Positions 27,955 to 31,650 of a stretch of 64,000 nucleotides of DNA are shown here, one piece after another. The stretch is from Caecitellus pseudoparvulus (taxonomy: Eukaryota; Protista; Bigyra: Bicosoecida), in contig CBFFRQ010000076.1 of the NCBI GenBank assembly GCA_965644315.1, positions 1 through 64,000 on the forward strand, in the 5' to 3' direction. Both the position numbers and the translations under genes were made by a program. The stretch's first letter is position 1; every line of letters begins with the position of its first letter. The notes under the pieces were generated by a model, which did no database searches, was not told where the DNA came from, and worked only from the letters and a program-made list of their open reading frames with translations.

Positions 27955-29436
27955 ATGGCTGCGCAGCATGACAGCGTGTTGTGGTGGGCTGCCACCTCGC
28001 CCAGCGGCCCGTGGATGCCCATCTGGTCCAAACGCGATGCAACGCCATCCGACATGTACGCTGAGCTCTGTGCAAAGTTCCCTGCCATGCAAGCTGACGG
28101 GGTTGACTTGACACACGCTTGGCTCGGCCGACCAGGCTCCCTTGTCGCGCTGGATTCGCCGCTGTCTGCCGCGGAGGGGAGTGGCTTCATCAGATTCGAC
28201 TGCACCACCAGTGGAAGCAGCGAGTCTGGCGCCGCCTTGCTGGCGCACACCCCGCCTCCCGTCCTGGAGCCTCACAAGATCCCCCTCGCATGCGAGGTGC
28301 TGAAGTCACTGGTGCTGGCAACTCAGACTGCGTTGCACGCAGCGACAGGGCAAGGCAGTGGTGACCCCGCGCCGGGCGCCAGCCTGCAGGACCTGCCCAG
28401 GGCCGAGCTGTTCAAGCGCGTCAAGGCTCTGGGCAGCCTCATCCAAGCCCGCAAGACTGCCTTGCAGACGCTGGCCCTTGCCGATGACTCGTCGTTGACG
28501 GCATTGGCCGCTCAAATGGCCGCATCGACATCAGCCTCTGTGCGTGCAGTGGCAGCACAGTACACACACAGCCAGGGACAGTGGAAGCACCTGCTGGCGG
28601 CCCTGGAGGGCGCGTTGGCTGCCTCTGCACCAGACTCCGCCAAGCCCCAGCTGGGCATCGGCAGTGCCATTCCCTCCGTCCCCGTGAAGGGAGAGACGCA
28701 GCTGGGGCAGCTGGCTGCAAAGCATGCTGGCGCCATACTGGTGTTCTTGCGGCACTTTGGATGACTCCCATGACGGTGCGTGGCTGTGCCAGCTCCCGCT
28801 ACCGCAGGTTTGCGCCTCAGCACCCCCTTGCCCCCCTTGCACAGAGACCACGTGGCAATGCTGGCGACCTACGCGAGCCTGTGGAAGGCACTGGACATTG
28901 CTGTGGTGGTGCTGTCGCTGTGCCCCACACCTGCAGCTGCGGCTGAGTGGGATGAGCAGGTAGGGCACCCCTTCCCTCACCTGCAGTGGGCGGAGGCCAC
29001 TGCCCCAGCTGACGCATATGCTGCCTTCGGGTTCAAGCGCTCCCTGGCTGGCGTGTGGGGAGCCCAGTCTTTGGGGTGGTATGCTCAGCAGGCAGCTGCG
29101 GGGCGGGAGCTGCAGTCCAGTCGGGGCCAGGATGTGCACCAGCTGGCAGGGGATGTCGTGGTTTCGGCGGAGGGGACGGTGGTCCTGCCGTATTACGGCC
29201 TGGACAACACCGACCGACCAGGCGTCACTACCCTGGCTTGGGCTGCTGCTGTCGCTGCCTGCAACAGCCAGCACGAGTCTCCTGCGTGGAGTGCAGCTGC
29301 GCAAACTGTCCGGCAACACTTGGCTCGCAGTGCAGCTTCCCACGGTGCACCTTCTGGAAGTGCTGTGTCAGACTCTGTGGGGGGCGCAAGTAAGAAGCCA
29401 GAAGCTGCAAACGCACCAGAAGACTGCGCCGCATGA
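27955..29436 (+). CDS. SELENOL: selenoprotein L (UxxU, AhpC/TSA-like thioredoxin fold); join(27955..28775,28845..29436); Sec at 28762-28764 and 28771-28773
   Basis: TTC TTG CGG CAC TTT GGA TGA CTC CCA TGA CG|intron|A GAC CAC reads FLRHFG-U-LP-U-RDHV; downstream YAAFGFKRS...DVHQLAGDVVV...DRP; SECIS in the 3' UTR. Confidence 0.92.
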
Positions 29437-29514
29437 CGCTTGCCTGGTAAGGGGGCAGCCAAGCGGCGCAGGGTGGGGGGTGTGGACGAGTAAAGGGGTT
29501 CGAAGGGGCTGGCA

Positions 29515-29583
29515 CCTGCACGTCACGACGCGTGGGGGGGAAAGTGTGCTCAAGCCACACTCCTCACGCCGAACAAATGCAGG
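29515..29583 (+). promoter_or_regulatory. type-2 SECIS element with ACGA core
   Basis: Helix I CCTGCA/TGCAGG; core ACGA (29525-28) and GA (29571-72); helix II GCGTGGGGG/TCCTCACGC; AAA (29541-43) 12 nt after the core; mini-stem GTGTG/CACAC. Confidence 0.85.
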
Positions 29584-29653: not shown

Positions 29654-31650
29654 ATGGGGGGAGGCGGGGAGCCAGAGGCCGGCAGCCGGCTCCTGCAGCG
29701 CCCATCAGAGCCAGAGCGGGGAAATCCCTCACCAGCATCGTCGAGCACGCCCTCTCCGCGACGGGGTGCCCCGAAGAAGCACCCAATCACCCTTGATGGG
29801 CCCTGGGGGACGCCCTTGTGCGCGTCGCTGTTCTACACGGTGTTTGCGTTGACTTTGCTGTATGCCAGGTGCGGAGATTGCCCACCACGCCGGGCCGTCG
29901 CAAGCTTCTTGTATCCCACTGGGGAAAGGACAGGGCCTGTTGTGGTGCATTTTCGCGGCAGAGTATCCCCACCTTTCTCCGTAGCGCATGGCGACTTGCC
30001 TCACGAATGCCTTGTCTGCACGGGCACCCGCCTTCAGCACACCTCGCTCGCTGCGTGCTGCGCAGTGGCTTGAACTACCTCCTGCTGAACCTCCTGACGC
30101 AAATGGGCGTGCGCCCGTCCCAAGCCCTGCTAGCAGTATTCCTGCCCTTTAACACGCTGCTGGGCGAGGACCCAGCTTCCCTGCTGCAAGTGCGGCAGAA
30201 CGGGTACCTGGACACGGATGGCATTCGGGGGCTGGTGTTCAGCGGAGCACTGCCATTCTTCGTGCTGGCCATTGGAGTGGAAATCGCGGGGGCAGTGCTG
30301 GTGTTTGGTCGCCGTCTGCACCGTGTGAACGACTCCATCAACAGCCTGAGCATGGGACTGGGGGACCAGTTGTGCGGCGCAGTCATCGGCTCCATGCTTG
30401 TGGGCCCATACGCCGCCATTCACTCCAAGTGCGCCTTGCTGCACGTGGACTGGACCCACAACGCGGCAGCTTGGTGGGGAGGCTTCCTGGCGGTGGACTT
30501 GGCGTACTACTGGTTCCACCGCTGCTCGCACGAAGTGTCCTTTTTGTGGGCATCGCACGCCGTCCACCACGGCAGCGAGGAGTACAACTTGACCACAGCG
30601 CTGCGCCAGAGCTTCTGGGGCAGCGCTGGCTTTGTCTTTTACTTGCCCCTTGCCTTTCTCTTCCCGCTGGAGCTGGCCCTGGCGCACAAAGTGATCAACT
30701 TGCTGTTCCAGTTTTGGATCCACACGCGCACGGTTGGCAGGTTGGGCCCCCTAGAGTGGGTGCTCAACACGCCCTCTGCGCACCGTGTGCACCACGGGCG
30801 CAACCCCTGGTGCATTGACAAGAACTTTGCCGGCACGCTCATCATCTGGGACCGCCTTTTCTGCACGTACCAGGCAGAGGAGGAGGTGGATGAGGAAATC
30901 GTGTACGGCGTCGTCCCACCCCTGGCCACGTGGCAGCCAGTGTGGGGCCAGACGCACCACTACGTGGAAATGGCACACAACATCTACCGAACACCTGGCT
31001 GCTGCAACAAGCTGCAGTTGCTGGTGCGCCCGCCGGGGTGGCAATGGGATGGCCGCAAAAACCGCTGCCGCCACTTCGCCGTGCCTCGCATCGGACACAA
31101 GGTGAACCCCCTCGCGCCGTATGACCCGCCTCTGCACCCGCTTCTTACGACGTATGCTGCTGTGCAATTCGGCACCATGCTTCTGGGCTACTTTGTCCTC
31201 GTCACCAGCGTGCCAGAATCTGGCAGCGATTCCGTGTCGCGCGGTGCTGCTGTAGCCGTTTACGCCGCCGCCACAGCGATTTTCGCACAAGGCCTGGTGT
31301 CCATCGCGGCAGTGCTGGACAGCAAGCCGTCAGCCATGCTGCAAGAGGCTGTCCGCTTGCCTTTGGCCCTGGCAGGACTGGTCGCACTGCTGGCCTGGCA
31401 GGCTGTGGCTGTGCGCGGGGATGCCTCGCCTGCGGCCACTGTCGCAGGGAGCCCCGCACTGTGGATAGTGGCTGCCGAAACACTTGCATCAGCTTGCTTC
31501 CTCCTGTGGTGGTGGTGGCGAGGCGGCTTGGCGCCGCCCACTGGCCACTACGCCAAGCTGGGCATGGAGACGAGCAGCTCGTCGCCAGCCGTGGAGCAGG
31601 AGTTGGCGGTGAAGCAGGGGCCTGCCCAGCAGACTGGGGGCGATGAGTGA
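29654..31650 (+). CDS. AGMO: alkylglycerol monooxygenase-like (fatty acid hydroxylase superfamily); intron 29869-30065
   Basis: His boxes YYWFHRCSHE, WASHAVHHGSEEYNLTTALRQ, FQFWIHT, HRVHHGRNPWCIDKNFAGTLIIWDRLF. Confidence 0.88.

What the first reader, a model, noticed from the sequence alone, without database searches (positions are those of the whole stretch)
27955..29436. Hidden diselenide (UxxU) selenoprotein L gene split into two ORFs by the ORF caller
Seen: the ORF ending at 28764 stops at TGA in FLRHFG, a second in-frame TGA follows two codons later, and a 69-nt GTGCGT..CAG intron (28776-28844) restores RHFG-U-LP-U-RDHV in frame with an AhpC/TSA-like C-terminal half. Known: RHFxULPURDH is the SelL signature, a rare family with a Sec-Sec diselenide reported mainly from fish, aquatic invertebrates and marine microbes. 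Inference: this protist encodes a full-length SelL, including an animal-SelL-like helical N-terminal region, that standard annotation would miss.
Basis: partly seen in the sequence, partly recalled or inferred. Interest (0 to 1): 0.9.

Follow-up and report, generated by a model that had tools for sequence, protein, structure and literature searches.

The report
Selenoprotein L with third selenocysteine
This marine protist gene encodes selenoprotein L, an antioxidant-type enzyme known for two selenium residues, and here it very probably carries a third one at the end of a flexible tail, hidden behind what looks like the stop codon; dinoflagellate relatives show the same.

Summary
TGAs at 28762 and 28771 form RHFG-U-LP-U. 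The 69-nt intron (28776-28844) sits where 20+ relatives run straight on in frame. The two halves match SelL (NF040769; helical N-terminus matches animal SelL). The genome has tRNA-Sec, SepSecS, a Sec-type SPS2 and eEFSec. The 'stop' at 29434 is a TGA three codons after a Cys (CxxU). All 13 relatives with this Cys (six close protist loci, seven dinoflagellate-type contigs) have TGA there, followed by a short conserved peptide and TAA/TAG. Seven of eight relatives without the Cys end in TAA/TAG. Predicted protein: 489 aa, Sec at 270, 273 and 471, stop at 29491. The SECIS (29525-29573) lies only 88 nt after the third TGA and has an ACGA core, as do this genome's SelT and SPS2 elements. In human SelN that U-to-C change causes disease. 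SelL in algae is already known; I found no paper on a three-Sec form. No RNA evidence could be obtained.

The parts
27955..28269 (+). Lineage-specific N-terminal extension (about residues 1-105), low-confidence, predicted mostly beta/coil; start ATG inferred
   Evidence: First ATG after the in-frame TAG at 27829-31; close relatives have extensions of similar size that barely align; pLDDT 40-60
28270..28626 (+). SelL N-terminal helical region (about residues 106-224), homologous to that of animal SelL
   Evidence: Profile A3 vs animal-type SelL L050: hhalign 95%, E 1.8e-8; HMMER pairwise E 1.5e-14, and 1e-8 for Glandiceps P0096; four helices, pLDDT about 80-90
28750..28775 (+). RHFG-U-LP-U-R redox motif; Sec codons at 28762-28764 (U270) and 28771-28773 (U273)
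   Evidence: Both TGAs kept in all eukaryote-type homologous loci that cover the motif
28776..28844 (+). 69-nt phase-2 GT-AG intron, in frame and stop-free
   Evidence: Absent from all non-conspecific homologous loci; same size and ends as SPS2, GPx and SelT introns of this genome; no RNA evidence
28845..29280 (+). Remainder of the peroxiredoxin-like (AhpC/TSA-2, SelL-type) thioredoxin-fold domain
   Evidence: NF040769 SelL_rel_redox E 1.5e-12; PF13911 E 2e-4; model pLDDT about 93, best structural matches Bcp1 3drn Z 8.7 and human prostamide/PGF synthase 9us9 Z 8.1
29281..29424 (+). One helix followed by a low-complexity, probably flexible linker
   Evidence: Unalignable among relatives; pLDDT falls to 44-55
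29425..29436 (+). C-terminal C-x-x-U motif: Cys468 (29425-27) and probable third Sec U471 (TGA 29434-36)
   Evidence: 13 of 13 loci with Cys at -3 have TGA; 1 of 8 without it
29437..29493 (+). 18-residue Pro/basic tail ending at TAA 29491-93
   Evidence: [QR]-[MLI]-P plus basic residues kept with synonymous codon changes in five other loci
29516..29582 (+). Type 2 SECIS: ACGA core at 29525-28, 10-bp helix II, unpaired AA, apical mini-helix, CGAA at 29570-73
   Evidence: Fold z -2.6; only 10/10 match of the pattern in 64 kb on both strands; same position and shape, with AUGA, in L001, L003, L018, L020

Best explanation
A spliced, two-exon selenoprotein L gene that encodes about 489 residues with three selenocysteines read from one SECIS. 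U270-x-x-U273 sits at the thioredoxin-fold active site, as in fish SelL. A third Sec (U471) forms a C-x-x-U motif at the end of a flexible linker. Shown by sequence comparison: family, both active-site TGAs, the intron position, conservation of the third TGA and of the peptide after it, a SECIS, and the machinery. Inferred (about 85%): the third TGA is decoded as Sec at least part of the time. Inferred (about 45%): the CxxU arm is a tethered electron shuttle. It takes electrons from a cellular reductant and swings in to reduce the very stable UxxU diselenide by selenol-diselenide exchange, much as the C-terminal Sec arm of animal thioredoxin reductase shuttles electrons (own knowledge). The short UGA-to-SECIS spacing may yield a mix of full-length and arm-truncated protein.
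For: NF040769 hit. Intronless relatives read RHFG*LP*RQHV. N-terminal helices match animal SelL. Cys-x-x-TGA in 13 of 13 loci against TGA in 1 of 8 loci without the Cys (Fisher p about 7e-5, worked by hand, sequences not independent). These loci fall in two separate well-supported groups on the tree. In all seven dinoflagellate-type contigs TAA/TAG follows within 1-2 codons. In the window's group the peptide after the TGA is conserved through synonymous changes. 33 of 60 close homologues end in C-x-x as called, with Cys at 1.1% background. TGA is only 5 of 13 stops in identified host genes. SECIS present. tRNA-Sec, SepSecS, SPS2 with in-frame TGA, and eEFSec found. A C-terminal CxxU is redox-active in SelO (PMC3994087).
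Against: The third TGA is 83-103 nt from the SECIS core in five loci, inside the 51-111 nt minimum and below the 207 nt shortest natural mammalian spacing (PMC3316567). The effective sample is two clades. Dinoflagellates favour TGA as a stop (own knowledge), and 34 of 50 long open frames in the window end in TGA (many are spurious frames). One Cys-less relative (L058) also ends in TGA. SBP2 was not found and PSTK only as a weak candidate. Animal, bacterial and many protist SelLs lack the arm, so it is dispensable. The arm-to-active-site contact was not modelled.
Confidence: 0.8

Rival explanations
1. Ordinary two-Sec SelL ending at TGA 29436 (470 aa, C-terminal C-A-A). The Cys near the end is a conserved resolving or regulatory thiol and the TGA is simply the inherited stop.
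For: Very short UGA-to-SECIS spacing (PMC3316567); TGA is a common stop in GC-rich protists; all described SelLs have two Sec (PMC3316567, PMC3473315).
Against: No switch to TAA/TAG in 13 loci that are otherwise unalignable in this region; a coding-type conserved peptide or an immediate TAA/TAG follows in every case; the Cys is at exactly -3 each time.
Confidence: 0.1
2. The third TGA is a programmed, SECIS-independent read-through site (UGA-C context) that inserts Trp, Cys or Arg at low frequency and appends a basic, possibly nuclear-targeting tail.
For: TGA is followed by C in 11 of 13 loci, the classic leaky context (own knowledge); the tail in the window's group is basic (AKRRR, KKRR).
Against: Dinoflagellate extensions are only 1-2 residues, too short for a signal; read-through does not explain the fixed Cys at -3; the mRNA already carries a SECIS; UGA-C also favours Sec insertion.
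Confidence: 0.06
3. Three Sec are made, but the CxxU arm acts on other proteins or binds a metal, independently of the UxxU site (SelO-like), rather than recycling it. This rivals only the mechanism part of the best explanation.
For: SelO's C-terminal CxxU forms transient complexes with another protein (PMC3994087); linkers vary from 59 to 146 residues and some contain hydrophobic stretches or an extra domain; SelL works without the arm in most lineages.
Against: The arm is kept in cis on a long flexible linker in two distant groups; one relative (L025) has a glutaredoxin-looking insert before the arm (by eye only, no Pfam hit), which would fit an electron-supply role.
Confidence: 0.35
4. The 69-nt segment is not an intron but a retained 23-residue insertion, or is retained in part of the transcripts.
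For: It is in frame and stop-free, and identical in five conspecific metagenome copies while the coding part differs by about 19 changes.
Against: Canonical ends and the typical intron size of this genome; no relative has an insertion in this active-site helix. About one difference is expected in 69 nt at 98.6% identity, so zero is not unusual.
Confidence: 0.04

Closest known systems
Selenoprotein L (SELENOL) of fish and aquatic invertebrates (Shchedrina et al. 2007, cited via PMC3316567 and PMC3473315; the paper itself was not held)
   Same: RHF[GA]-U-LP-U-R motif, peroxiredoxin-like domain, N-terminal helical region, one SECIS
   Different: Extra N-terminal about 105 aa; C-terminal linker with probable third Sec in CxxU and a basic tail; ACGA SECIS core; intron 2 nt after the second UGA
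NCBIfam NF040769 SelL-related redox protein (bacterial) and Pfam PF13911 AhpC-TSA_2
   Same: Catalytic domain, with the conserved QD-H-Q-x-x-GD and DRP motifs
   Different: Bacterial members seen here are about 175 aa with U/C-x-x-C type motifs, no helical N-terminus and no arm; scores are below the curated cut-offs because the domain was searched in pieces
Selenoprotein O (PMC3994087) and SelTryp (own knowledge)
   Same: Redox-active C-x-x-U close to the C-terminus
   Different: Unrelated host folds; a single Sec; no second selenium centre in the same chain
Animal thioredoxin reductase C-terminal Gly-Cys-Sec-Gly arm (own knowledge)
   Same: Functional analogy: a Cys/Sec pair on a mobile C-terminal tail next to a second redox centre
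   Different: Adjacent CU rather than CxxU, flavoprotein fold, no homology

Membership tests
Selenoprotein L | Two in-frame UGA codons two residues apart (UxxU) in the RHF[AG]-U-LP-U-R context | tested here: met
Selenoprotein L | Peroxiredoxin-like thioredoxin fold carrying the motif | tested here: met
   NF040769 E 1.5e-12; model of the post-motif piece matches Bcp/Prx folds at Z 8-8.7
Selenoprotein L | N-terminal helical region as in animal SelL | tested here: met
   hhalign 95%, E 1.8e-8 with L050; HMMER alignments with L050, Glandiceps, Capitella and Trichoplax proteins; Atlas top hits named Selenoprotein L at 0.80, a lead only
Selenoprotein L | A single 3' UTR SECIS serving the Sec codons | tested here: met
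   One SECIS-shaped element at 29525-29573, conserved in position in four relatives. Rfam RF00031 did not detect it, and its core departs from the UGAN consensus
Selenoprotein L | Exactly two Sec per chain, as described for known members | tested here: not met
   A third conserved TGA in CxxU; treated as an addition that makes this a variant, not as exclusion from the family
Selenoprotein L | Intramolecular diselenide bond between the two Sec | not testable with these tools
   Needs mass spectrometry of the protein
Eukaryotic selenoprotein (host competence) | tRNA-Sec, SepSecS, SPS2 and eEFSec in the genome | tested here: met
   tRNA-Sec, UCA, 72.6 bits; E 4e-123; SPS2 with G-TGA-GCK; E 1e-20
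Eukaryotic selenoprotein (host competence) | PSTK and SBP2 in the genome | tested here: inconclusive
   PSTK: weak candidate L057, none with TIGR03575 genome-wide. SBP2: the five L7Ae hits read as L7a, L30, Snu13, Nhp2 and S12
Canonical eukaryotic SECIS | Core UGAN/KGAW with a 5' U | tested here: not met
   Core reads CGAC/CGAA; SelT and SPS2 of this genome also have ACGA; consensus from PMC3753652

The most novel reading that the evidence does not exclude
An undescribed three-Sec class of SelL, present in at least two distant protist groups including dinoflagellates, in which a tethered C-terminal CxxU arm is the built-in reductant of the UxxU diselenide. This would be a natural single-chain selenium relay, and here it is translated with a SECIS core that is non-functional in humans and at a UGA-to-SECIS distance at the accepted minimum.
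Probability: 0.4. Interest if true: 0.75.

Novelty: new variant of a known kind. Interest (0 to 1): 0.55.

Why it matters
SelL is the standard example of a protein with a diselenide in its redox motif, and how that bond is reduced and what SelL does are unresolved as far as the papers I could read say. A natural variant with a third Sec on a mobile arm suggests a concrete, testable answer. It also shows a class of hidden Sec that even selenoprotein-aware annotation would miss, because the codon sits where the stop is expected and has no Cys homologue. The same mRNA offers two natural tests of decoding rules. One is an 83-103 nt UGA-to-SECIS spacing. The other is a genome-wide ACGA core: the same U-to-C change impairs SBP2 binding and causes myopathy in human SelN (PMC3541580), which implies an altered SBP2 in this organism.

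Tried and rejected
Rfam SECIS_1 found nothing in the window or the genome. A MAFFT alignment of the SECIS elements misregistered the window's 3' arm, so no covariance model was built and pairs were counted by script. The N-terminal profile search of the large database returned only close protist sequences. Fold searches of the N-terminal model gave only generic helical bundles. PDB sequence search found nothing significant. Both GPx genes looked at gave no in-frame TGA; L021 has a Cys codon split by an intron. The original SelL paper and the SEPN1 SECIS paper were not held. Paper searches for a three-Sec SelL or an ACGA SECIS found none. Rejected: sequencing error or pseudogene (the two active-site TGAs are present in all five conspecific metagenome copies, the third in the four that reach it); general TGA reassignment (TGA ends EF-Tu, Snu13, GPx and AGMO).

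Full report
Observation. An ORF from ATG 27955 ends in LRHFG at TGA 28762-64, then Leu, Pro and a second TGA at 28771-73. A 69-nt segment, 28776-28844, starts GTGCGT and ends GCACAG. It is phase 2, in frame and stop-free, and removing it gives R-D-H-V. Three other introns of this genome are 68-71 nt with GT and GCAG ends. The best support comes from relatives: L001, L003, L019 and L020 have no such segment and read RHFG*LP*RQHV with TGA at both stars, as do dinoflagellate-, haptophyte- and animal-type contigs with R-[DNH]-H-V. Five metagenome copies of the same species (98.6% identical) keep the motif and intron, so this is not an assembly error. The joined protein was not built; every search used the pieces.

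Family. The second exon matches NF040769 SelL-related redox protein (E 1.5e-12) and PF13911 weakly. Its model is confident over the first 160 residues and matches Bcp and peroxiredoxin folds and human prostamide/PGF synthase at Z 8-8.7. A profile of 14 protist N-terminal halves aligns over 132 columns with an animal-type SelL contig (hhalign 95%, E 1.8e-8) and with the helical N-termini of Glandiceps, Capitella and Trichoplax proteins. The first 105 or so residues are a lineage-specific extension without an assignable fold. On a quick tree of the post-motif domain the gene groups with five close loci (support 100) inside a protist SelL assemblage next to animal SelLs, with bacteria apart (midpoint root, deep branches weak).

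Machinery. The genome has tRNA-Sec (72.6 bits, UCA anticodon), SepSecS (E 4e-123), a selenophosphate synthetase with an in-frame G-TGA-GCK, eEFSec (E 1e-20) and a SelT-like gene with C-T-A-TGA. PSTK is only a weak candidate and SBP2 was not among the L7Ae hits. TGA is still an ordinary stop in 5 of 13 identified genes, so it is not generally reassigned. It has 30.6 Mb, 65% GC and a 1697-nt 18S gene; from memory this fits a heterotrophic stramenopile such as a bicosoecid, which is a lead only.

The third TGA. In all five other close loci the frame also ends in [ED]-C-V-E and TGA, and the next codons read Q-[MLI]-P plus a basic stretch to TAG or TAA (L019 is cut by the contig end). The window reads R-L-P-G-K-G-A-A-K-R-R-R and stops at TAA 29491-93. 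Gln, Pro and the hydrophobic position are kept through synonymous changes, the mark of coding sequence. Seven dinoflagellate-type contigs (P0018 of the same clade is Cladocopium) end in E-C-x-x, TGA, then 1-2 codons and TAA/TAG. Seven relatives without the Cys stop at TAA/TAG. One more, L058, lacks the Cys yet ends in G-G-TGA, has a second G-G-TGA eleven codons on, then one codon and TAG; it is either a plain exception or another Sec tail. The tally is 13 of 13 against 1 of 8 (p about 7e-5 by hand), but the 13 fall in two clades, so the number overstates independence. Among 60 close homologous proteins, 33 end in C-x-x as called. I put about 85% on Sec at this codon. The model is then 489 aa with U270, U273 and U471.

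SECIS. A type 2 element lies at 29525-29573: 10 of 10 helix II pairs, unpaired AA, an apical mini-helix and flanking helix I (z -2.6). It is the only perfect match to the pattern in the 64 kb. L001, L003, L018 and L020 have an element at the same place with different but paired stems and an AUGA core. The window has ACGA, and so do the elements behind this genome's SelT and SPS2 genes, so the change looks genome-wide. The consensus core is UGAN/KGAW (PMC3753652), SBP2 selects a protruding U (PMC1874613), and T-to-C at this U in human SelN impairs SBP2 binding and causes myopathy (PMC3541580). The host's SBP2 must therefore differ. The third TGA is 88 nt from the core (83-103 nt in relatives), within the 51-111 nt minimum and well under the 207 nt shortest mammalian case (PMC3316567). 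This is the main argument against efficient decoding.

Mechanism. Shown: gene structure by homology, conserved codons, SECIS, machinery. Inferred from the family: U270 and U273 form a diselenide at the start of the active-site helix (bioRxiv 10.1101/2025.05.29.656587 describes this for SELENOL). Inferred and untested: the CxxU on a 59-146 residue variable linker, predicted disordered here, shuttles electrons from a cellular reductant to that diselenide, which I recall being hard to reduce with thiols. I give this about 45%, against 35% for an independent SelO-like role toward other proteins (PMC3994087). Leaky termination at the third UGA could make arm-bearing protein depend on selenium supply.

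Comparison and verdict. This is a member of SelL by motif, fold, N-terminus and SECIS. SelL is described with two Sec (PMC3316567, PMC3473315) and is already listed for algae (PMC7539508), so its presence in a protist is a new member only. The probable third Sec in a C-terminal CxxU, shared with dinoflagellates, was not found in the papers searched, nor was an ACGA core; subscription papers are not covered. Verdict: new variant of a known kind, interest 0.55.

Noticed in passing
G000 genome-wide; L048 (SelT-like, C53) and L012 (SPS2, C56) 3' UTRs: Both SECIS elements have an ACGA core; the SPS2 one appears to have CC instead of AA at the apex. Close relatives of the SelL gene keep AUGA, so the switch is specific to this lineage and implies a changed SBP2.
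   Followed up: partly
L058:1258-1308 (P0136): A dinoflagellate-clade SelL lacks the Cys arm but ends G-G-TGA, ten residues, with a second G-G-TGA, one codon and TAG: possibly another multi-Sec tail.
   Followed up: partly
L025:980-1747 (P0032), P0150: A roughly 100-residue insert that looks like a glutaredoxin by eye (CPSH, CPCV, FIGGCDDL) lies between the SelL domain and the CxxU arm; Pfam gave no hit.
   Followed up: partly
L029, L031, L032, P0009-P0013, P0015: Many protist SelLs without the arm end in a hydrophobic stretch plus basic residues, like tail-anchored membrane proteins; some arm-bearing dinoflagellate ones (L024, L036, L051) have two hydrophobic stretches before the arm.
   Followed up: no
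window:27955-28270 and L032 upstream of 2100: The N-terminal extension has a strand-strand-helix-strand pattern by eye that recalls a ubiquitin-like fold; the model was too weak to test it.
   Followed up: partly
window:29437-29490: The tail after the third TGA is basic (AKRRR; KKRR in L001) and could be a nuclear localisation signal present only on full-length protein.
   Followed up: no
window:29654-31650: The downstream gene is a fatty-acid-hydroxylase-family (alkylglycerol monooxygenase-like) gene (PF04116, E 1e-25), whose probable ATG at 29654 is about 70 nt after the SECIS.
   Followed up: no
window:24607-27831: The upstream gene is a NIMA/Nek-like kinase (PF00069) ending at TAG 27829-31, only 123 nt before the SelL ATG.
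   Followed up: no
L021 (G000:C67), L022 (G000:C66): Neither glutathione peroxidase examined shows an in-frame TGA at the active site, although the organism uses Sec; in L021 the Cys codon is split by an intron.
   Followed up: partly
P0161, P0063, P0083, P0096: Public annotations of Trichoplax, Capitella and Glandiceps SelL homologues skip the UxxU-containing stretch altogether.
   Followed up: no
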